A stretch of 64,000 bases of DNA from Zygnema circumcarinatum SAG 698-1b (Eukaryota > Plantae > Zygnematophyceae): contig CM074816.1 of the NCBI GenBank assembly GCA_037447605.1, positions 2,260,525 to 2,324,524 on the forward strand, read 5' to 3'. Made by a program: the position numbers and the translations under genes. Below, piece after piece: positions 16,866 through 60,030 of the stretch (position 1 is the first letter of the stretch; every line of letters begins with the position of its first letter). The notes beneath the pieces are model-generated. The model made no database searches and had not been told where the DNA came from. It was given only the letters and a program-made list of their open reading frames with translations.

Positions 16866-19091
16866 ATGGATGCGCCCACGGGGAAGCAAGAGGAGGAGGA
16901 TGGGGAGGAGGAGGAGAAGAAGGAAGGCTTCTCTTCGGAGGGCAGTCCATGGAGAGAAGAAGATGTTATAGTCTCTTTGGAATCTTCTGATGAAGGAAAA
17001 GAGGCTTTTCTCAAGGAACCTCGAGCGATCCCTGCTGCAGAAGAGCGTGGAAGTGACGTTCCATTTCAGTTTAGGGGATCCGATGCATACAGGCAGGCAA
17101 AACGTGGAGAGAGTTCACAGTCCTTAGGGTTTTCCGTACGCTCCTTACTTCCTGGAGGAGGAGAGGGAGAAGAAGGAGGAGGGGTGAAGGAAGGTGAGGG
17201 AGGAGCGTCCAGGGAGCTCGCGGAGCTCGGGCTGTTTTCCGAAGAAGAGCGAACCTCTCTTGAAGGATTCCATGGCGGGTGGAGCAGGGGAGAGGAGGAG
17301 GGGATTGGGGAAGAGCTCAGGGAAGCCATGGCGACCTCCTTCTTGGAGGGGCTCCTGGAAGCGCCTCCGAACTTGGAAGCTCCGCGCTGGGTGACTGGAG
17401 AGTTTGCAGGGGCGCATGGGGAGCTGGAATGGCTAAGTAGAGAGGAAGAACAGGCGGAGGGCGGGACTCCTGGTGAAGTCACCGGGCCAGAAGGCAGACA
17501 GGGTTTTGAAATCTCGAAGCAGGAATCGGAGACCTCCGCATTAGCTTTATCAAGAGCTCCTTTACAGAGCAGTAGGGACGCCGCAGGGCTTCAAGAACCT
17601 CCCGGAAGCATCGGCACCATTCCGGAAGCTTCGTCGATCGGAACGGAAGCGATGCTGCATCGCCCCCTGAAGCGTGTGACAAAGGCCTCCGATTTGCTGG
17701 ACCCGGAAACCATAACGGTAGACCTTAGCTTTCTCAAAAGTGGACGGCAGCGAAAGGGAGTTGAAGCGGGAGGGGTTGTAAGCTCTTTGGAAGCTGCAAA
17801 GACTGGGGAAGAAAGCGGGGCACGTGAGGGACAGGAGGAGGAAGGAGAGAGTTTAGAGGGTGGGCTGACGAAGAATGTGAGAAGAGGGAAGAAGGGAAGG
17901 GAAGAGGAAGATCTGACAACAATTGGCGTAGTAACCGGGAGATTAGGAGTGGCTGTAGGGATGAGTACGGAATTGGAAGGGAGAGAGAGGGAGGGGGATC
18001 TTGCGAGAGTGACTCGGGGCGAGGTCGGGAAGGAAGGGGAAGGGTTGTCCGGGGAGAGAAGGGACGCCCTTGAGGGTACGGAGATGGAAGTGGAGGAGCG
18101 AAGGAGAGGGGAGGAAAAGACGGGGTTGGAAGCCGGGAGGGGGACCGAGGGAGGGAAAGCAAAGGAAGGAGAGGGAGATACGAGGAGATTGAAAGAGGGA
18201 ATGGCCTTGAGGGATGCACGTTCGGTAGCGAGACGAGGAGGTTCTTTGCGGCTATCTTCTGCACATGCAAAAGGCGGGAAAGGAGCAGGTCTCCCACCAG
18301 CTCCGACTAAGAGAGGCCGAGGAAAACGAAAAGGAAAGGAAGTGGATTTGAGCTCTACGGCTGCTCCCACACCACAGAAACAGGAGACGGAACAAAAAAC
18401 TCTCCAACAACCCCCCGTAAGTCTTAGTCCAACAACGGAAGTAGAAGAGAGAACTCCGATCGGATGGGAGCGGACTGTGTGGCAGCGTAGCGAGGCAAGG
18501 AGTTCCTCTTCTCCTTCTACAAGTGCTGGGGAGACTTCCCGAGTGCGGACGGCTGTGAGTCAACTCTCCGTGCCTGTAATGCAGCCGGGATTTGTCGTTC
18601 CTGCGAACATGTCCGCTTCTGAGCTGTTTGAACGGTTTGTTCGATCTGCACCACGAAAGACACCTCAAAAAAGTCACAAGCGGTCCACAGCATCCACTTC
18701 GTCATCACCCTCCTTTCAATCACAGGCATCCTCAAAAGCAGAGGTTGTAACATCGCCCTTTGGAGGTCGCCCCTCCACGTCAGGACTAGGCCAAGAGTCC
18801 ATGCAACTTTCAGCAGTGCCAATCTCCTCGACAAGCATTCAAACTGAGTCTTCAAATTCTCCAGCTATTGTGTTAAGGCAGCCGGTGCAAGAATACTCCT
18901 CAGAGTCTATCACTGAGGGCAACACAGCGTTAGTGCAAGCAGCAGCATCGTTTCTTGATCGACAACGAATGGGGGGACGAGAAGGAGGGAATGCAGCATC
19001 AGAACCTGCTAGGAAGCAAAGAGAAGATCTGCCACCAGTTGTCGAGGAGAGTGAGGACGACATAAAGCAGGGAAAAAACCAGGAAAGCTGA
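16866..19091 (+). CDS. 741-aa uninterrupted, low-complexity (Glu/Gly/Ser-rich) ORF of unknown function, probably intrinsically disordered
   Basis: A 2.2-kb stop-free frame that is not a simple repeat, with a basic NLS-like patch PTKRGRGKRKGK. A possible donor A|GTGAGG at 19061 to the AG at 19986 would give an alternative C-terminus. No recognisable domain. Confidence 0.55.
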   Translation: MDAPTGKQEEEDGEEEEKKEGFSSEGSPWREEDVIVSLESSDEGKEAFLKEPRAIPAAEERGSDVPFQFRGSDAYRQAKRGESSQSLGFSVRSLLPGGGEGEEGGGVKEGEGGASRELAELGLFSEEERTSLEGFHGGWSRGEEEGIGEELREAMATSFLEGLLEAPPNLEAPRWVTGEFAGAHGELEWLSREEEQAEGGTPGEVTGPEGRQGFEISKQESETSALALSRAPLQSSRDAAGLQEPPGSIGTIPEASSIGTEAMLHRPLKRVTKASDLLDPETITVDLSFLKSGRQRKGVEAGGVVSSLEAAKTGEESGAREGQEEEGESLEGGLTKNVRRGKKGREEEDLTTIGVVTGRLGVAVGMSTELEGREREGDLARVTRGEVGKEGEGLSGERRDALEGTEMEVEERRRGEEKTGLEAGRGTEGGKAKEGEGDTRRLKEGMALRDARSVARRGGSLRLSSAHAKGGKGAGLPPAPTKRGRGKRKGKEVDLSSTAAPTPQKQETEQKTLQQPPVSLSPTTEVEERTPIGWERTVWQRSEARSSSSPSTSAGETSRVRTAVSQLSVPVMQPGFVVPANMSASELFERFVRSAPRKTPQKSHKRSTASTSSSPSFQSQASSKAEVVTSPFGGRPSTSGLGQESMQLSAVPISSTSIQTESSNSPAIVLRQPVQEYSSESITEGNTALVQAAASFLDRQRMGGREGGNAASEPARKQREDLPPVVEESEDDIKQGKNQES

Positions 19092-25650: not shown

Positions 25651-27731
25651 CCGCCCGCCCGCCGCCGGCTCGGACCGCGTCCCCGCGCCGCCGCGAACCG
25701 CTGCGCGCCAAAACTGGTTGGACGGGCCGCCCACCGACCTACCAATGTGGACTGACAGCACCGACCTACGGTAAAATAGGGTTTTTAGGGGGCCGCACGG
25801 CGGACGCGCCAACTCGCCGGCCACTCCGCGCAGCGCCATTGGCCGCTGCGCTGGCCCGCGCGACGCGGCCCCCCGGGACCGTCCGATGGAGAAGTGCGAT
25901 CATTTCCGACCGTCGATGCGTTTCAGATTGCGCGCCCGTGCGTCTGTAAAGCGCCAAACTGGCGGCCCCCTCGCCCACCGCGCGTGCAAGTGGTCGCCAC
26001 GCGTCCGCCACACGCCTCGTCCGTATGGCATGCGCTTCGCACGCGCGGGTAAGGGCCCGGAGGCAGGGCCACACTGCCACGTGTGCAGCCACGCCGCCGC
26101 TGGCGGAGCATCGCACGAGAAGCTCGCGCAAGATGCCGCCACGTGTCGCTTCCAGCCGTCCACGCCGGCCAAGCAGCGGCGCGAGCGCCAACCGATGCTG
26201 CGACAAAGCAATCATTGCGGTGCGTGACTCGATTGGCCGGATCCGGATCGGATTTGGAGTGTACAAACGGCCTTGTGTCCGTACCGTCCGGTCCTCGGAT
26301 CTGCCAGTCACATCTTTACGGAACGCAATGATGGAAGGGGTAGCGTACGGAGGGGGAACGCGTGTACGGACGACGGTGGTCCGGCCTTCCGGTCGGCGCC
26401 TATGGCCAAGTGCCAACCGGCTGACTCCACGGCCCGCGGTGGATGTACGAACATTTTGGACGGACACGGACGTCGGCCGTCCCGGTTGCGATGGAGCGGT
26501 TGGCTGCGGTTGCGGTTGCAGTTGCGGTTGCGCCCGGGGCAGGATGGATGGGATGTGCGTCGGACGGATGTCCTTCTCTCTCGCTCTCTCCCTCTTCTCC
26601 TCTTTCCGCATTCTCGACTTGCTCTCTATGCTCTTCTGTTCTCCCCCCCTGGCCTTTTCCCCCACCTCCACCCCCCTCTCTATCTCCCCTGTCTCCCTCC
26701 TCTTTCCCACTCGTTCCCCGCCATTGGTTTCAACTTATTGAAATTCCTTTATTTAAGCGTCGATATCTGAAATTTCAAAAAAAGAGAAACAGACCAGTAA
26801 ACGCGAGGGGCCTCGTTCTGTCGGCCTTCACCTTCACTGCGCGCTGAAGTTTGAGTGCTACAGCCTCTGCGCTTCCCAGGACCAAAAATCGCCTCCTTTG
26901 AGTTTGTTGGTGTGGTGATGAAGAGGGGCGAGCGAGGCCATGAAGTCGTGGACGCAGATACTTCTTCCACCCTCATCTCGTCGGCCGAAGGGAAACCACG
27001 AGGAATACTATATATTTTGGGGAGGGGATGAGAGGAAGAACGCATGCTTTTGTATCGGGCTTTTCCTTTTCCTTTTAGCGTATGTGGTTAGACCCATGAA
27101 TTGATTTTGTTCGGATCCGATTGATCTTTGGTCAACATGGGACCGCAGTACCGTGCGATGCTTTGATGCAGATGCCACGTGTCATACATGCACATTTGGT
27201 GCCACGCATGCACTCCGTGTCGGGGATGCATCACATATTGCATGTTAACCATGCACTGTATGTGGTCAACCACAGTTGGTTAACCGCTATTCGACCGACA
27301 AAACCGTACAATCACGGATGCGTACAGTTTTTTTGTACGGTACGGTCTGGAAACACCTCACGTCCACTGCGAGGCGGGTGTAGTTTTACGGCCAAGCGTT
27401 GTTTGTATGTGAGGCCTGTTCCAGTTGAATTTCAGCGAATGAGTACTCGCCACGTGAATTGTTCGATTGGCAGCGACGTGGCAAGTACCTATTGGTTCAA
27501 TGCTTAGACTGAGTTGAACTGGGCCACGGCTCGTAGAGTCCGCAGCTAGGTCTTTCTGCCGACTAAAACTTCTTGGGTTGGGGTGAGAATACGTCATGTG
27601 CGAACCTGCTATTGGGCGTTGGACCCCTACTCACTTTGTCGTTTAGATCTACAGAAAACTCGGTGACGTAAGCCGGGCGGCAGAAAACCAGGAGGGAGAG
27701 GCTGGAGGGCGCGAGGCGGAGCAGGGCCGCC

Positions 27732-28996
27732 ATGGCGCCCAAGAGGAAGGCCGCCGCCGCTTCAACCAGAGCGAAGCCGGCAAAGCGCGGGAAGGAGGAG
27801 GCCCGAGAGGGGGGGGAAGATGTAGTTCAAGCTTCAACATCAACTGGGACTGCGAGTATCATCATTGAAGCTTGGTACATGATACTGTATTTTAGGGTTC
27901 GTTGGTTGCTGTCTGTAGGGTTTTGAATGGAGAATTCATGGGTTCGAGAATGTATGGAATGCGCTGTAGCATGTGTCACGGTGTGGGTGAAGGTTGAATA
28001 CAGGATGCCTGCTCGTTGGGTATGCAGTTGTGATGATTTTCAGTGAGTATTTTGTCTGCATTGGGCGCATCGCATCGACATTTCAATGAAAAGATATCGT
28101 CATTGAACTAAAATTTATGTTAAATCGCGAGCTCGAGCATACAAATTTTCAGATTGTATTGAACATTCCACCGAGGGAAAGCAATTTTGCAAGGGATCAA
28201 GGTGAATGCACGTTCACTGAATAGGCGAAACTTACGCCGCTTATCGATGAGAACCAAATGATCACCTGCAAAATAATGTCCTTTTAAAATATTTCTTTGT
28301 TTTTTTTTTTTTCCGTCCCGTTTTGATCATCCAACAGCAAGTCATGAGGTGCATTCAAAACTCGAGCAGCCAAGATGGAGAAGTTGCTCAAAGAGGCGGC
28401 TCCCGGTCTCACTGTCTCCATTAATCCGGAAAAGGTGCTCTTATCTCACCCAGCGTTTAGCTTCTCTTTATAATGCATTCAATCGTAAACGCGCACGCAA
28501 AAGAGGGGGGAGAGATGATGGATCCGAGGCACAGGGAGAGAGTATGAGATACAGTGGGAGAGGTATTGATTACAGTGTGTGTTGCTATGTTTGTATTTTT
28601 CCTCCCCTTTTGCTAACTTTGGCAGCCAAGAAAGGGATGCTTCGAGGTGCGAGATGAGTCAGGGACCATCTTCTTATCTCTTCTGGTCAGTACCCTTTTC
28701 TCTCTCTCGCTCTCTCTTTCTTTCTCTCTCTCTCTCTCTCGCCCCCCCATCTCTTTCTCTCCCATCCTCTCTCCCCCATTCGACCATGGGCTATTGAAAT
28801 CCCCACCATCGTCAGAACTTAACCAAGCCTTTACATGGATGAGGGAGGCTCTGAATGGCCCTTGTTTTATAACCTTCGTGCCATTTTCACTCCGCAGGAT
28901 ATGCCGAGACCCTTCACCAAGCTGAAGGCTTTGGACCTAGAAGCGGAGGCAAAGGAAATTTCTGCAAAACTTTCTGAAGCTGCGGAGAAATCGTGA
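27732..28996 (+). CDS. SELENOH: Selenoprotein H (SelT/SelW/SelH thioredoxin-like family), 132 aa, with UGA-encoded selenocysteine
   Basis: Exons 27732-27874, 28338-28434, 28626-28685, 28898-28996 give MAPKRKAAA...IIIEAC-K-S-[TGA 28345-28347]-GAFKTRAAKMEKLLKEAAPGLTVSINPEKPRKGCFEVRDESGTIFLSLLDMPRPFTKLKALDLE...KS*. It has a CxxU motif, a basic N-terminus, an NPEKPRKGCFEV motif and a downstream SECIS. Confidence 0.95.
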
Positions 28997-29020
28997 GGAG
29001 CACTTCACAGCTGAATACGG

Positions 29021-29115
29021 AATGTGAGCGTGAACTGAATGACCTTTTTCAGGGAAAGTCCGCAGACACCTGAAAGAGTGAGCATGGCGACCAGCCATGG
29101 CTTCGCGCTTACATT
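29021..29115 (+). promoter_or_regulatory. Type II SECIS element (selenocysteine insertion sequence) in the SELENOH 3' UTR
   Basis: AUGA 29039-29042 with UGAG 29079-29082 forms the non-Watson-Crick quartet. Helix II is CUUUUUCAGG/CCUGAAAGAG (10 bp, one G-U). Unpaired AAA at 29055-29057; mini-stem GUC-cgca-GAC. Basal helix AAUGUGAGCGUGAA/UUCGCGCUUACAUU (14 bp). Confidence 0.93.
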
Positions 29116-29985
29116 GATGTACTTCAGCATGCGACCTCCTCGCTCTCCCCCTCCTCCCTTCCTCTCTCTCCCTCTCCCTCTCCCACCTCTCCTTCGCCTG
29201 CACACTGCCTTCAGGCATTTCCTAGTATTCACAGTGCATGTAGGTGTGTATTATTTGTACGTGCATGTTCTTTTCCGGACAGATGATATGAAACTCGTGG
29301 TTGCCGAGAATTGTCGATGAGTTCATGGAAGTGGCTACACACTATTGCTACTTTGAGATGCTTTTTAAAATTATATATTGCAGTTGGATTAGGAGTGAGA
29401 TATTGCTAGGATGTTTAACTTCCATATCTGCTTGACAGCTGTATGTTCAAGTATTATGAATGTTTATAATCATCCTGACAGTTAAAGTAAACATGGAATA
29501 TCGTCATCTTTGCGGCGATGAGACGATGGAAACATGCAAGTGCGTATTTTTATCAGGAATGTTTGTTGAGTTGTGGCAATAACACTCTAAAACATGTGCA
29601 AGGTTCTGCCACGAGCGCATTTGTATTGCGCCCTCAACGGATACACCCACCCTCAAGTTTCCTCATCACGAGTACAAAAAACGAAGGGATGTAACACAAG
29701 GCCTGTTCCATCTATCGATGTAAAAAAACTTTTTGTCGACCAACAGCTTTGCTTTAACGTGCGAATTATTGGAAACCTACTTTTCCATGGAGTCAGCCTC
29801 GCAACAAACCAAACTAAACTGATTGCGACAAGAATTCCCATTTCTTCGTTTTCCCAAAATAAATAAGATAAACCATGGTCTCCTCCAGGTTTTATGATTT
29901 TTTTTCATAGGACGCCGATAACTTAAAAGGCCTTTAAGCAGAAAGCAAAGCCTTCAAAGAGACCACTTTGCTGATGGCGATGCCA

Positions 29986-31242
29986 TCACTCGGAAAACCT
30001 GCACAGCAGTAAACCGAACAATCAGGTCACACGAACAAACCCCATCAAGTTACATTGGAAGTTCGTGACATTACAGCGATTAACAACACTCATGTTTTGA
30101 CGTTGCATCCATATCGCCACCCCAGTAGTTAATCATAGTAATATTTAGAGGGGTGCCATGTTATTATGGAAACCAAAAATTGACAACCGATATGACCTAC
30201 AGACCGACATACCAACCAACTTGCGAGCAGGCAGAGGCTTACCCGAGTTCAGAGAGCTTCTGGTGTGCCTCGGCGTAGTCACGGAAGAAAGCGTCCTCAT
30301 CCTGCTCACCACATAAGAAAGTTCGAGCATTCAATGTTTATGAAAGTTCGAGTTCGGAAGAGCGTAGTTGTTTGTACTGAAGGTTTATTCCACATGCTGC
30401 AACATGGACGGAGTTGAGAAACAGATTCAGACTTGACGAACTATGTTACTGATCACACTTGTCAGCTTCATGTTCCATGTGGCAGTTATCAGCTCTAGGT
30501 AACGGCACAAACATTAGCATAGATCTCCACGTATTCGCGGAAGAGGGGGTCTTCCACCAGTGCCTTGTCCGAAGGGAGAACCAAAAGACCGTCGGACTCG
30601 CCCTGGAGCAGTTCCCTGCATCACTCAGTTCCCAGTTTCCGTTCCGTTAACACTGAACAAAACACATGTGTACAGTGTTGGAACCCAAAATCCAAAATCA
30701 GATATTTCTTCCCATTTTCTATCGATTAGGGTTTGAAAATGTGGAGAAGAACTAAAAAAAACATCAGAGTTAAGAATGTTTTTTCTCTTCTTCTTATTTT
30801 TTACAAACTTACACAAAGTAGGAGTTGTCGAACAGAAGCGGCTTCTTAGTCCACGCTCCCTCAAAGCCGGACCGCTCCTTGTGGGCTCGGCCCTGAAGAT
30901 GAACGGAAATACGATGAGAAACTCTACAGGTACAAAGTTTCAAGCATACATGAAAACTGATTCTCCAATGGGACTGAAACTATGCACCATAAATATGTGC
31001 ATAGCGCATCAGACCTCTTATTCCCTCTTCTCCTTCGCCGCCAAAATTCACTTGCACCATGGCCACATTGTGGAAATGCTCGAGATACAGATGGGCATAG
31101 AGAAGAAAAGGAGGAGAACAACAAGTGCAGAGAGTGGACTAGGGAGGGAGAGAGGGAGAGCAAGAGTGAGAGATGAAGAAGGAAGAGGAGAGTGGGGTGG
31201 GAGAGGGAGAGGGAGGGGGAGAGAGAGAAGGAGAGAGAGAGT

Positions 31243-31275
<33 letters not shown>

Positions 31276-33398
31276 CGAGTGAGAGAGAGAGGGGGGGGGG
31301 AGAGAGGGAGAGAGCCATACCAGAGTGTGGGCACCAGAAAGGGCAACAATCTCCTTGTCGCCCAAACCCATGTGTCCGAACACATCACGGAGGTGGTCGG
31401 AACCTGCGGGGCGCAAAAAAAAGGCCTTTACTTCCCCTACATCTTCACCCTTGACAAAAGCAGGCTGCTTTATAATTCGATAAATGTTGTTAGTAATTGA
31501 TTGTGTTTTAAGCCTTCTATAAGCAGGAAAACTAACTTAGTTCTTAAGTATTATAAATTGCTCTAAAGAAGGGAAAAAGGCGCACCCTTTGTGGCGTCAG
31601 GGAGACGGCCCTCCTCTGGGGTCTTCAACTCGTCCTGTCCAATGAGTAAGGACAAAGAGTCAGATTATTTCAGGCTTCGGACTGACATTCAAGCTATCAA
31701 AAGAATACTCAAACGCCGAATGTGAGAGACCAGCTCAAGTTGATCACGATTAACTAAAATATTTATTTCAATGCTGTAGTTTATTTGGTGATGTTTACCT
31801 TCCTGCCCGGGTTGAACTCAATTGTGGGTCCACCGGTGATTTCCACAGCCACAACACCCGCCAGCTGTACATTCCAGGTTCAAGAAAAAGCTGGGTCAGT
31901 AAAGGCATTGGATCCAACTAAAATAGTAGGAGCAGACGGAGGAAGTAACACGTACGGGCAAGTCAGCAAAGGGGAAGAGAGTGGGAGAGAGAAGTAGACC
32001 GATCGTCGGAGGGAGTGCGAGCAAAGGAGATCAAGGGGCAAAAGGAGGTAGAAGAGTACAAGTATCATAATCATAATCTGTATCATAATACCACACAGCC
32101 GACCTCACCATTCCCAAACACACCAAAGCCCCACCCCTTCAGGAAAGTCCGAACAGACTCAAAATCCAAAAAGTTCGCACAACCGCCAACGCCCAGCCCT
32201 TCAGAAAATACCCAACAAAATTATTTAAAAGAACAAACGGGCCGAAAGGACCAAGAGTGCCCGAGACTGATTAAGTGGGCCCCGTCGGCACCTGGTAGAG
32301 GTCGGCGTATGTGATGATGGGGAACATCTCCTTGACCGGCTCAAGGAATTCGACGGCCCAGATCAGCCCGGCGTTGGCGCCGTGCGCGAGCTCCTCGGCG
32401 TTCTTCATGCTGCCGTTGGGCCCGCCCGTCTTCGTCTTCACGTCGTACGTGCCGCAGGAGTGCCATCTGCACAAGGAGAGAGAGAGAGAGGGAGAGGGAA
32501 AGGGAGCGGGAGAGGGAGAGGGAGAGGGAGAGGGGAAGGGAGAGAGAATGTGAAAATAAGCCGACGCTTCAATCAATACACGAGCCAAACAGCCATCTAC
32601 CAACCAGCACAAATCAAACAGACAAATCAAACAAATAGCAAGTATCAAGTTCACAATGTAGAGAAATAAGTCGGCATCCAAAACTTTTGGGCAATGCAGC
32701 TCTATTCTGCGGATCGGGACGTTAGAATTCTTTAAGTTCATTCTCAAAAGGGGCAAATCAACACCGCATATAAAGGAAAGCTGGCACAGAGAGAGAGAGG
32801 GAATTGAGGAAAACAGACAGGAGGGTGGTGGAGGGAGAGACCGACATGGGGGAGAGATAGCGAAACAGGAGAAAGAGAAGAAGTGAGGGAGAGAGGTAAG
32901 GCAGAGAGAGAGAGATAGAGAGAAAGACTTACGCAAGACGGACCATGATGGGCGCGCAGTTCTTCTCTGCACAGCACCGACAGAAGAGCAATGCCACTTT
33001 AATACACAACTGGCCTCTGTATCTCTCTCTCTCTCTCTCTTCTCTTCTTCTCTTCTCTCTCTCTCTCTCTCTCTCTCTTACTTCCTCTCCTTTCTTCCTC
33101 GTCTCCTCCCTCACTTCCTTCACATAGCATCTCTCGCTTCTACTTTTCATCCTACCACAATCTCTCCCTCTCACCCCCTCTTCCCCCACGCTGTCCTGTC
33201 CTTCCCTGTCCCTCTCGCCCTTTCCCTTCCTCTACGCTCCGCTCTCCATAACCCCTCTCTCTCTCTCTCCTCCCTCCCACTCTCCCCCCCCCCTTTCTTT
33301 CTCTCCCATTGTCCCGGACCTGCGATGAGTCCCCGCAGCTTCCTCGTTGCCTTCTCTATGGCCACCTTGTACTCGTCACTCACTACGGGGTAGCCCAT
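29986..33398 (-). CDS. APX: Cytosolic L-ascorbate peroxidase, 246 aa, 10 exons
   Basis: Exons 33398-33320, 32966-32933, 32466-32292, 31864-31799, 31634-31586, 31403-31321, 30892-30813, 30615-30513, 30301-30243, 29998-29986. Motifs [62 protein letters not shown]. No transit peptide or C-terminal TM segment. Confidence 0.96.
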
Positions 33399-34889
33399 GG
33401 CGGCGAGGTGAGGGAGAGAGCGAGAGAGAGAGAGAGAGTGTGAGAGAGAGATAGTGTGTGTGTGAAGGGGAGAGTAGAAATGGAACGTGAGCGAGCGGAG
33501 CCAATACTTAAGCCCAGGGGGACAACGCCTCGTACGGCCTAGATTTGGTGTAATAATTTACGCAATTTCCAAAGGCCCAGCCGCCCGGAGCCACACGTGC
33601 GGCGGGCAATCCGTGGCTGAAAAAGTGCCACGCAGCGCCTCTAAAGGGCGGACAAAAATATTTTTGTCGAACGGGCAGCGGCCTGATATTGCTTTTGAAG
33701 GATTTGGGATCGCCGGGCAGATGATTGAAATGTGTCGGTGGAAAATAGTCGATTTTTTGTGGAAGGACCAAGCGTGGAAATATTTGTGACTTTGTTCGGG
33801 CAAAGATAACGTCATGTTCGCGGGGAACAACCAATCACGTACGCACATCACACTTGCATTTATTTTGATTGGATTTGGAACCGAAAATGGTGGGAAAAAT
33901 TCGACTTGAAATGTTTGTCCTTTGGCAGTAAATATTTTTGCGAGGCCGGTCTTGGGACGGCGCAGGATAAACGGCTTGTGGCGGACACGCGCTCGACGCC
34001 AACGTGGCGGCGGCTCTGGAACCTTCACCGGGACAAGACCAGTATCGCAGTAACAATTGGATCTCTGAAATTTACGACTTTCGGGGAAAAAATCTGCAGT
34101 TCTTTTGCCGGCAAGGCTTGATAAATTTGACCTTCCCCTATTGGAAACTACAATTTATAAAAGCCAATGGAAATTTGCCACGTGTACAATAATTTGACGT
34201 GGTCGCCAGTCATTCGTTGAGACTGCACTTTTAATTTTATGTTGGAGAAGTTCAAATTTGGGAGGTGGCCTTATTCCATCGCAAACATTATTTTTTAAGA
34301 ATAAAAGAATCTATCGTGGCTGACGCTGATTGGTCGATGTCCTGAGAACGGTAATATCTTCAACGATTCGGGCACAAAAAAACATTCTATTCTCACCGCG
34401 GCCTCCAATCGACCAATGAGAGCGCGCCGTGACTCCCTTCACCCGTGCGAGAGGGCCTCCGGATGGCTCCGCCGCGCGTGGCTGGCGCGCGCCCACGCTG
34501 ACTCAGATCGGGGGAGCAGCACCGACAAAAACTGCGACGCAACGCTCAACTGCTACCATTTTCATGAATAAATCAAAAATCCACCTTTTCCTTGCCAGTA
34601 AGATCATCCATGCTATAACTGGATTTCTACATGTGGTCCCAGTTCCAGTTCCATCCCGTAATGCTCAGTCCATCAAGGAACTTGACAGTTTCGGCTGTCG
34701 TCACGGTTCTATGCGTGAAAAGTTGGATTGTAGAACGAATTCCGGAACAGAACGCAGCGCGAGACAACAGGGAGAAGCAAACCTTTCCCTCTTCATTTCG
34801 GAGGGGGGCTCCGACTCCATATCCCTCCCTCTTCTCCGCCATCCCTGCCCTGCGCCACTCCCTCCCCTGCGCCTCTCCCTCCCGCCGCC

Positions 34890-47070
<12,181 letters not shown>

Positions 47071-56195: not shown

Positions 56196-60030
<3,835 letters not shown>

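What the first reader, a model, noticed from the sequence alone, without database searches (positions are those of the whole stretch)
27732..28996. Hidden selenoprotein H gene: in-frame UGA in a CxxU redox motif in a streptophyte genome
Seen: splicing four GT-AG exons gives one 133-codon frame whose only internal stop (TGA 28345-28347) falls in IEAC-K-S-[TGA]-GAFKTRA, followed by SelH-like sequence (NPEKPRKGCFEV). The Cys codon is split by the intron (TG|C), so ORF finders miss the gene. Known: animal and chlorophyte SelH use CxxU, while land-plant homologues use CxxC and embryophytes lack the Sec machinery. Inference: this organism decodes UGA as Sec, so it is a charophyte-grade alga retaining the ancestral selenoprotein. 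Automated annotation would probably truncate or mis-splice this gene.
Basis: partly seen in the sequence, partly recalled or inferred. Interest (0 to 1): 0.93.

Follow-up and report, generated by a model that had tools for sequence, protein, structure and literature searches.

The report
Selenoprotein H gene in streptophyte alga
This is a real, expressed four-exon gene for selenoprotein H, whose in-frame UGA very probably encodes selenocysteine, in a green alga close to land plants; the gene model is a good catch, but selenoproteins in such algae are already documented.

Summary
Four GT-AG exons (27732-27874, 28338-28434, 28626-28685, 28898-28996) give a 132-residue frame. Its only internal stop is TGA 28345-28347, in the motif IEA-C-K-S-[TGA]-GAFKTRA. 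Intron 1 splits the Cys codon (TG|C).

- **Expression:** assembled RNA contigs from four runs in three studies carry exactly these junctions with no mismatches, so the UGA is in the mature mRNA.
- **Conservation:** seven distinct orthologous transcripts from other samples have TGA at the same codon. Land-plant homologues have Cys there (CKQC; ferns SKEC).
- **Selection:** downstream of the TGA, non-synonymous differences are about 0.10 per site while synonymous sites are saturated.
- **SECIS:** a type-2 SECIS sits 42 nt after the stop (29021-29115, AUGA at 29039). Four orthologues share it, and all ten helix-II positions show compensatory changes.
- **Organism:** a kinase exon in the same window is closest to Closterium and Mesotaenium, then angiosperms. 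This points to a zygnematophyte-like streptophyte alga.

Published surveys (PMC6627142, PMC7539508) already report complete Sec machinery and a few selenoproteins in every streptophyte algal class, and list SELENOH among the most widespread algal selenoproteins. I could not test the Sec machinery from this window. The scan also holds an unchecked note of a UGA-containing GPX elsewhere in this genome.

The parts
27558..27731 (+). 5' UTR (minimum extent). It contains a 16-codon uORF at 27596-27646.
   Evidence: The longest RNA contig starts at 27558 (X2 record 3). The uORF was read from the sequence.
27732..27874 (+). Exon 1 CDS. It encodes the basic N-terminus (MAPKRK..., Lys/Arg/Ala-rich) and strand beta1 (IIIEA), and ends with TG of the Cys codon.
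   Evidence: The MAPKRK start is shared with orthologues.
27875..28337 (+). Intron 1 (GT..AG, phase 2), which splits the Cys codon of the CxxU motif.
   Evidence: The joint 27873->28337 (cut +1) is seen in all four runs.
28338..28434 (+). Exon 2. It begins with C of the Cys codon, then K, S, then the Sec codon and helix alpha1.
28345..28347 (+). In-frame TGA, the predicted selenocysteine codon 51 of the CKSU redox motif.
   Evidence: Present in the RNA contigs with 0 mismatches. There is a TGA at the same codon in 7 orthologous transcripts. Land-plant homologues have Cys at this column.
28435..28625 (+). Intron 2 (GT..AG).
   Evidence: The joint 28432->28624 (cut +2) is seen in all four runs.
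28626..28685 (+). Exon 3 (PRKGCFEVRDESGTIFLSLL).
28686..28897 (+). Intron 3 (GT..AG), rich in CT repeats.
   Evidence: Contig pieces run 28624-28684 and then 28897 onward within the same records (table 8).
28898..28996 (+). Exon 4 CDS (DMPRPFTKLKALD...), ending at the terminal TGA 28994-28996.
28997..29423 (+). 3' UTR. Contigs end at 29394-29423 in three runs; one contig runs on to 29732.
   Evidence: table 8.
29021..29115 (+). SECIS element. Helix I pairs 29021-29034 with 29102-29115. The AUGA is at 29039-29042. Helix II pairs 29044-29053 with 29069-29078. The apical loop G-AAA plus a 3-bp mini-stem lies at 29054-29068. The 3' U-GA is at 29079-29081. A side hairpin lies at 29083-29099.
   Evidence: Unconstrained and constrained folds. 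The same architecture occurs in orthologues L001 and L002. The core is also present in L011 and L012, with 47/50 canonical pairs and compensatory changes at 10/10 helix-II positions. Rfam did not report it.

Best explanation
A functional nuclear gene for selenoprotein H (SELENOH), a small thioredoxin-like oxidoreductase of the Rdx family. The mRNA is spliced from four exons. During translation, the UGA at codon 51 is recoded to selenocysteine under the direction of the SECIS stem-loop 42 nt past the true stop. The product has a C-K-S-U redox centre between strand beta1 and helix alpha1, preceded by a disordered basic N-terminal tail. The host is a streptophyte alga close to Zygnematophyceae. 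Its land-plant relatives carry the same gene with Cys in place of Sec.

Shown here: the gene structure, the UGA in the mRNA, family membership, SECIS conservation, and purifying selection downstream of the UGA. [quoted passage not shown]
For: - **Gene model and in-frame TGA:**
- **Expression:** spliced RNA contigs from 4 runs in 3 studies carry the TGA with 0 mismatches, at depth 40-90.
- **Homology:** the 81 residues after the TGA hit proteins that sources name Selenoprotein H at up to E 7.5e-26, with 70-80% identity. A profile search recovers hundreds of plant and algal SelH proteins.
- **Conserved TGA:** seven distinct orthologous transcripts have TGA at the same codon in IEACKS-TGA-[G/S/N]AFKTRA.
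- **Cys in land plants:** that column is Cys in seed plants, lycophytes and ferns.
- **Selection:** downstream of the TGA, pN is 0.10-0.11 against pS 0.78-0.83 versus the two nearest orthologues.
- **SECIS core:** AUGA, a C.U mismatch, a 10-bp helix II, AAA, a mini-stem and U-GA. It is shared with 4 orthologues, with 10/10 helix positions showing double compensatory changes.
- **SECIS background rate:** about 0.003 expected per 430-nt UTR in simulated sequence, and about 0.017 from the window's own hit rate.
- **Fold:** an AF2 model of the closest relative gives beta1-CxxU-alpha1-beta2-beta3-beta4-alpha2. Its best solved matches are mouse SelW and bacterial Rdx proteins, with TM by target 0.60-0.74.
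- **Literature:** the Sec machinery is present in all streptophyte algal classes (PMC6627142), and tRNA-Sec is retained in streptophyte algae (PMC13578239).
Against: - Rfam's SECIS models gave no hit at gathering score, nor at E<=10 over 28900-30400.
- Pfam Rdx is below its cut-off: 13.5 bits for the C-terminal piece and 15-19 bits for full-length relatives, against 22.6.
- No tRNA-Sec or Sec-machinery gene lies in this window, so the organism's capacity to insert Sec rests on literature and on an unchecked scan note of a UGA-containing GPX.
- The fold evidence comes from a close relative (P0216, with W at the Sec site), not from the window's own protein.
- RNA evidence is from assembled contigs, which drop rare isoforms.
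Confidence: 0.9

Rival explanations
1. UGA is read through without selenium, for example as Cys or Trp by a near-cognate or suppressor tRNA. The protein would then be made but would not be a selenoprotein.
For: The Sec machinery was not observed here (one search found no tRNA in the window). Gene callers using other codes render the orthologues with W at this site.
Against: A conserved, covarying SECIS sits in the 3' UTR of this gene and of its orthologues, which has no purpose under plain read-through. TGA is kept at exactly the redox-active position across divergent lineages, while synonymous sites are saturated. The published Sec machinery covers all streptophyte algal classes (PMC6627142).
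Confidence: 0.04
2. The gene is a decaying pseudogene, or it makes only a 50-residue truncated peptide. The UGA would act as a genuine stop in a lineage that is losing Sec, as land plants did.
For: Subaerial streptophyte algae have very few selenoproteins (PMC6627142), so loss is under way in the group.
Against: The mRNA is abundant and fully spliced rather than degraded. The 81 codons after the TGA have no further stop or frameshift and are under strong purifying selection (pN about 0.1 against pS about 0.8). The SECIS is intact.
Confidence: 0.03
3. The contig is not from a streptophyte. It would be a chlorophyte or other algal contaminant in the assembly, making the evolutionary framing wrong although the gene is real.
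For: By identity, the window's SelH resembles chlorophyte Sec forms (70-75%) more than land-plant Cys forms. The SelH tree does not place it with land plants.
Against: A CDPK exon 29 kb away in the same window is closest to Closterium (74%, 68%, plus two Closterium-like sequences in a Leptophrys vorax transcriptome) and to Mesotaenium (62%), then angiosperms. RNA runs from three studies under the same organism label hold the transcript. The similarity to chlorophyte SelH is expected if the Cys forms diverged faster.
Confidence: 0.05

Closest known systems
Chlorophyte selenoprotein H (Chlamydomonas, Pleodorina, Coccomyxa, Haematococcus; SelH also reported in Ostreococcus, PMC2375036)
   Same: 70-75% identity over the C-terminal 81 residues. 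Chlorophyte-like transcripts show the same IEACKS-UGA-GAFKTRA motif. They share the basic MAPKRK N-terminus. The intron position inside the Cys codon also appears to be shared; this is inferred from mis-annotated models that read IEAW.
   Different: The host lineage differs (a streptophyte, by the CDPK evidence). The SECIS here and in the two closest relatives carries a side hairpin between the 3' GA and helix I, which I did not see clearly in the more distant L011 and L012.
Land-plant 'selenoprotein H' Cys homologues (e.g. Cinnamomum, Vitis, Brachypodium, Ginkgo, Diphasiastrum, Adiantum)
   Same: It is the same family and aligns without gaps through the redox motif and the NPEKPRKGCFE / MPRPF / KLK.LD blocks.
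   Different: Land plants have Cys where this gene has UGA (CKQC; ferns SKEC). They are longer (150-215 aa) and need no SECIS.
Rdx family (SelW, SelT, SelH, MIEN1/Rdx12; PF10262)
   Same: The predicted fold is beta1-CxxU-alpha1-beta2-beta3-beta4-alpha2. The best structural matches are mouse SelW 2npb, bacterial SelW-like proteins 3dex, 2obk, 2fa8 and 2ojl, and MIEN1 2ljk.
   Different: The Pfam Rdx score is below the gathering threshold. SelH has its own long basic N-terminal tail.
Published selenoproteomes of streptophyte algae (Liang et al. 2019, PMC6627142; Jiang et al. 2020, PMC7539508)
   Same: These report Sec machinery and 1-9 selenoproteins in every streptophyte algal class, including Zygnematophyceae (Mesotaenium 1, 'Spirotaenia' 3; Sec proteins in 15 of 40 transcriptomes). 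SELENOH is listed among the most widely distributed algal selenoproteins.
   Different: I could not establish from the held text or supplements whether SelH is among the zygnematophyte selenoproteins they list, or whether this organism was in their sets.

Membership tests
Selenoprotein H (SELENOH) | Significant sequence similarity to established SelH proteins over the whole domain | tested here: met
   E 7.5e-26 to 1e-21 and 64-80% identity to proteins that UniRef or NCBI name Selenoprotein H. A profile search returns 683 relatives. Animal SelH was not among the sequences retrieved; the link to animal SelH rests on PMC2375036.
Selenoprotein H (SELENOH) | CxxU (or CxxC) redox motif immediately after the first beta-strand | tested here: met
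   C-K-S-[TGA] follows IIIEA and aligns with CKQC of land plants. It lies between beta1 and alpha1 in the model of the closest relative.
Selenoprotein H (SELENOH) | Basic, low-complexity N-terminal tail (associated with nuclear or nucleolar location in animals) | tested here: met
   Residues 1-21 are Lys/Arg/Ala-rich, starting MAPKRK. The tail is shared with orthologues and is predicted disordered (pLDDT below 50 for residues 7-42 of the relative). Localisation itself was not tested.
Rdx family (PF10262) | Pfam profile match above the gathering score | tested here: not met
   13.5 bits for the C-terminal piece and 14.9-18.6 bits for full-length relatives, against a cut-off of 22.6. Some land-plant homologues carry a precomputed PF10262 hit.
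Rdx family (PF10262) | Thioredoxin-like Rdx fold | tested here: met
   The test used a proxy, the AF2 model of P0216, the closest full-length relative found (66-87% identical by region): mean pLDDT 72.9, and 85-91 across most of the domain. Foldseek PDB top hits are SelW and SelW-like proteins, probability 1.00, TM by target 0.60-0.74.
Eukaryotic selenoprotein gene | In-frame UGA present in the mature mRNA | tested here: met
   Spliced contigs from 4 runs in 3 studies cover 28337-28432 with 0 mismatches.
Eukaryotic selenoprotein gene | SECIS element in the 3' UTR (AUGA/GA quartet, helix II, unpaired AA in the apical loop) | tested here: met
   All core features are present at 29039-29081. They are conserved with compensatory changes in 4 orthologues. 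Caveat: Rfam models did not detect the element.
Eukaryotic selenoprotein gene | Cys-containing homologues aligning at the UGA | tested here: met
   Land-plant homologues in the alignment have Cys at that column.
Eukaryotic selenoprotein gene | Sec machinery in the same genome (tRNA-Sec, SBP2, eEFSec, PSTK, SepSecS, SPS) | not testable with these tools
   Only this 64-kb window is available and it holds no tRNA gene. The literature reports the machinery in all streptophyte algal classes (PMC6627142).
Eukaryotic selenoprotein gene | Selenium actually incorporated at the UGA | not testable with these tools
   This needs 75Se labelling or mass spectrometry.

The most novel reading that the evidence does not exclude
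The SelH SECIS of this alga and its two closest relatives is a three-way-junction variant. A 5-7 bp side hairpin sits between the 3' GA of the SECIS core and the 3' strand of helix I. Its position is conserved while its sequence is entirely different in the three species. If this hairpin matters for SBP2 binding or recoding efficiency, it would be an undescribed SECIS form in the lineage sister to land plants. It could also help explain why standard SECIS models missed the element.
Probability: 0.3. Interest if true: 0.45.

Novelty: new member of a known kind. Interest (0 to 1): 0.3.

Why it matters
The gene gives a clean, RNA-supported example of a Sec-containing SelH in an alga close to land plants. 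Land plants carry the Cys version of the same gene (CKSU against CKQC), which is useful for dating and dissecting the Sec-to-Cys switch at terrestrialisation.

It is also a practical annotation warning. The Cys codon is split by an intron and is followed by an in-frame UGA. Public models of the chlorophyte orthologues skip or truncate this segment, so selenoproteome counts for these algae are probably underestimates.

It does not change the current picture, because Sec use in streptophyte algae is already established.

Tried and rejected
- **Rfam scans:** the whole window at gathering score, and 28900-30400 at E<=10, found no SECIS family hit. The element was found by pattern and folding instead.
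- **Pfam on the post-UGA piece:** only a sub-threshold Rdx hit.
- **PDB sequence search with the closest relative:** nothing.
- **AlphaFold Swiss-Prot fold search:** only weak thioredoxin-like matches such as MIEN1, with TM below 0.5, and no SelH entry.
- **SelH maximum-likelihood tree:** Sec forms and Cys forms separate, but the window's position is unresolved (49/86 support). It therefore cannot place the organism.
- **SECIS pattern scan on L003, L006 and L008:** my simple scan found no convincing SECIS in these 3' UTRs. I did not pursue it.
- **ARAGORN:** no tRNA in the window.
- **Liang et al. supplements:** a search for SelH entries in zygnematophytes found none in the stored, truncated files.
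- **Literature search for a described SECIS with a side hairpin or three-way junction:** nothing relevant.
- **MAFFT alignment of the five SECIS:** it put one sequence out of register, so I counted pairs in a script by distance from the core.

Full report
**1. Observation**

The sequence at 27732-28996 splices into four exons: 27732-27874, 28338-28434, 28626-28685 and 28898-28996. All introns are GT...AG. The CDS is 399 nt, i.e. 132 codons plus a terminal TGA. The only internal stop is TGA 28345-28347, codon 51, in IIIEA-C-K-S-*-GAFKTRAAK.

**2. Expression and splicing**

Nine runs under one organism label were listed, and six of them hold the stretch. I laid four runs from three studies on 27400-29800.

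- Each run has a contig that joins exon 1 to 2, 2 to 3 and 3 to 4 at these positions. The positions are ambiguous by 1-2 nt and are consistent with the GT-AG cuts.
- The contigs have 0 mismatches and depth 40-90.
- The mRNA runs from at least 27558 to about 29394-29423.
- Low-depth contigs over intron 1 look like precursor RNA.
- No joint removes the TGA and no base differs, so the UGA is in the mature mRNA. It is neither an assembly error nor an edited site, within the limits of contig data.

**3. Family**

- The 81 residues after the TGA hit 106 proteins. Several are named Selenoprotein H by their sources, at E down to 7.5e-26 and 64-80% identity.
- A profile of ten hits recovers 683 relatives, including many land-plant SelH proteins of 150-215 aa.
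- Several public chlorophyte models read IEAW|ATKLEK. They lack the ten codons around the Sec site or begin downstream of it. This shows that annotation pipelines do mis-handle this gene.
- It also suggests that the intron inside the Cys codon is ancient.
- No hit was flagged as encoded by this window, so the gene seems absent from the predicted-protein collection in the length ranges searched.

**4. Conservation of the UGA**

Contigs encoding the nearest hits give seven distinct orthologous transcripts. All have TGA at the same codon in IEACKS-TGA-[G/S/N]AFKTRA. In a 41-sequence alignment, that column is Cys in the land-plant homologues: CKQC in seed plants and lycophytes, SKEC in ferns. Against the two nearest orthologues (L001, L002), the 66 codons after the TGA show pN 0.10-0.11 and pS 0.78-0.83. 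This region is therefore translated and under strong constraint.

**5. SECIS**

Rfam found nothing. Folding nevertheless shows the following elements.

| Element | Coordinates |
|---|---|
| AUGA | 29039-29042 |
| C.U mismatch | 29043 / 29079 |
| Helix II (10 bp) | 29044-29053 / 29069-29078 |
| Apical loop: G-AAA plus a GUC/GAC mini-stem | 29054-29068 |
| 3' U-GA | 29079-29081 |
| Helix I | 29021-29034 / 29102-29115 |

- The same core is present in L001, L002, L011 and L012.
- Across the five sequences, 47 of 50 helix-II cells are canonical pairs. All ten positions show double compensatory changes, while the strands share only 0-6 of 10 bases.
- A pattern of this stringency is expected about 0.003 times in a 430-nt UTR in simulated sequence. 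From the window's own hit rate the figure is about 0.017.
- The AUGA lies 42 nt after the stop.
- In the window, L001 and L002, a 5-7 bp hairpin of unrelated sequence sits between the 3' GA and the 3' strand of helix I. This agrees with another first-stage note on this window.
- I found no description of such a form, but I did not test it further.

**6. Fold**

The model was built for the closest full-length relative, P0216, a gene call that reads the UGA as W. It has a disordered basic tail followed by beta1-CxxU-alpha1-beta2-beta3-beta4-alpha2. Its best solved matches are mouse SelW and bacterial SelW-like (Rdx) proteins, plus MIEN1, with TM by target 0.60-0.74. Pfam Rdx stays below threshold.

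**7. Organism**

A protein-kinase exon at 57733-58578 (minus strand) belongs to a calcium-dependent protein kinase. Its closest relatives are two Closterium proteins (74% and 68%), two sequences from a Leptophrys vorax transcriptome (68% and 65%), and Mesotaenium (62%), followed by angiosperms. From my own knowledge, Leptophrys is an amoeba grown on Closterium, so those two sequences are most likely prey. This supports a streptophyte alga near Zygnematophyceae, but it rests on one exon. The SelH tree cannot place the organism.

**8. What is known**

- Lobanov et al. 2007 (PMC2375036) reported Sec machinery and selenoproteins in the streptophyte Mesostigma, and their loss in land plants.
- Liang et al. 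[quoted passage not shown] They counted few selenoproteins: Mesotaenium 1, 'Spirotaenia' 3, and Sec proteins in 15 of 40 zygnematophyte transcriptomes.
- Jiang et al. 2020 (PMC7539508) list SELENOH among the most widely distributed algal selenoproteins.
- A 2026 review (PMC13578239) states that tRNA-Sec is retained in streptophyte algae.

The finding is therefore a new, well-supported member of a known kind.

**9. Mechanism**

- **Shown:** gene structure, the UGA in the mRNA, homology, the Cys/Sec column, the conserved SECIS, and purifying selection.
- **Inferred:** SBP2 and eEFSec act on the SECIS to insert Sec at codon 51, giving a CxxU oxidoreductase. The basic tail suggests nucleic-acid or nuclear association, as in animal SelH; this last point is from general knowledge and was not tested.
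- **Not testable here:** the machinery genes and selenium incorporation.

An unchecked scan note reports a UGA-containing GPX with a candidate SECIS 1.35 Mb upstream in the same genome. If real, it independently indicates Sec use in this organism.

**10. Verdict**

My confidence that this is a genuine Sec-encoding SelH gene is about 0.9. Interest is modest (0.3), because the biology is already established. The main value is the corrected gene model, and possibly the SECIS side hairpin.

Noticed in passing
window 29083-29099; L001 about 618-634; L002 about 680-694: A side hairpin sits between the 3' GA of the SECIS core and the 3' strand of helix I. It is present in the window and in its two closest orthologues, each time with unrelated sequence (CAUGGC/GCCAUG, GGAGGCU/GGCCUUCC, AGAGU/GCUCU). 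Helix I is GUUGUG/CACAGC in L001 and GUUGUG/CACAAC in L002.
   Followed up: partly
window about 30900-33400, minus strand: A multi-exon ascorbate peroxidase gene converges on SelH. Its exon peptides include [26 protein letters not shown] and [19 protein letters not shown]...[10 protein letters not shown]. An RNA contig end with adapter letters at 29703 and very high depth (about 1900) in run X6 suggest that its 3' end lies there.
   Followed up: partly
window 30300-30250 (minus); 42233-42271 (plus); 53349-53310 (minus); 59187-59137 (minus): Four further matches to my loose SECIS pattern, each with 9 of 11 helix pairs. The first lies in the presumed 3' UTR of the ascorbate peroxidase gene. They are probably chance matches (about 0.8 expected in simulated sequence); I did not examine them for upstream in-frame UGA.
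   Followed up: no
window 27596-27646, plus strand: A 16-codon upstream ORF (ATG...TAG) lies in the SelH 5' UTR. Only the longest contig, which starts at 27558, includes it.
   Followed up: no
Proteins P0005, P0009, P0011, P0019, P0030, P0003, P0004 (public chlorophyte SelH models): Public annotations of SelH in Pleodorina, Haematococcus, Coccomyxa and Chlamydomonas skip the CKSU-GAFKTR segment (reading IEAW|ATKLEK) or carry spurious N-termini. In other words, they are mis-spliced around the UGA. The W implies that exon 1 ends in TG, as it does here, so the intron position inside the Cys codon looks conserved.
   Followed up: partly
Alignment (Adiantum and fern-like transcripts): Fern SelH homologues have SKEC instead of CKQC. 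The first Cys of the motif is replaced by Ser, while the Cys at the Sec position is kept.
   Followed up: no
Proteins P0108, P0109 (EukProt Leptophrys vorax): Two CDPK sequences in the transcriptome of the amoeba Leptophrys vorax are most similar to zygnematophyte kinases. They are likely contamination from algal prey.
   Followed up: no
window 57733-58578, minus strand: An exon of a calcium-dependent protein kinase gene (Pkinase domain, E 7e-18). I used it for taxonomic placement.
   Followed up: partly
window 16866-19091, plus strand: A 741-residue uninterrupted ORF with no Pfam match. Its nature is unknown.
   Followed up: no
window 28690-28760, 29150-29200, 31050-31320: Long CT/GA-rich simple repeats lie in introns and UTRs. 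Read laying skipped these stretches.
   Followed up: no
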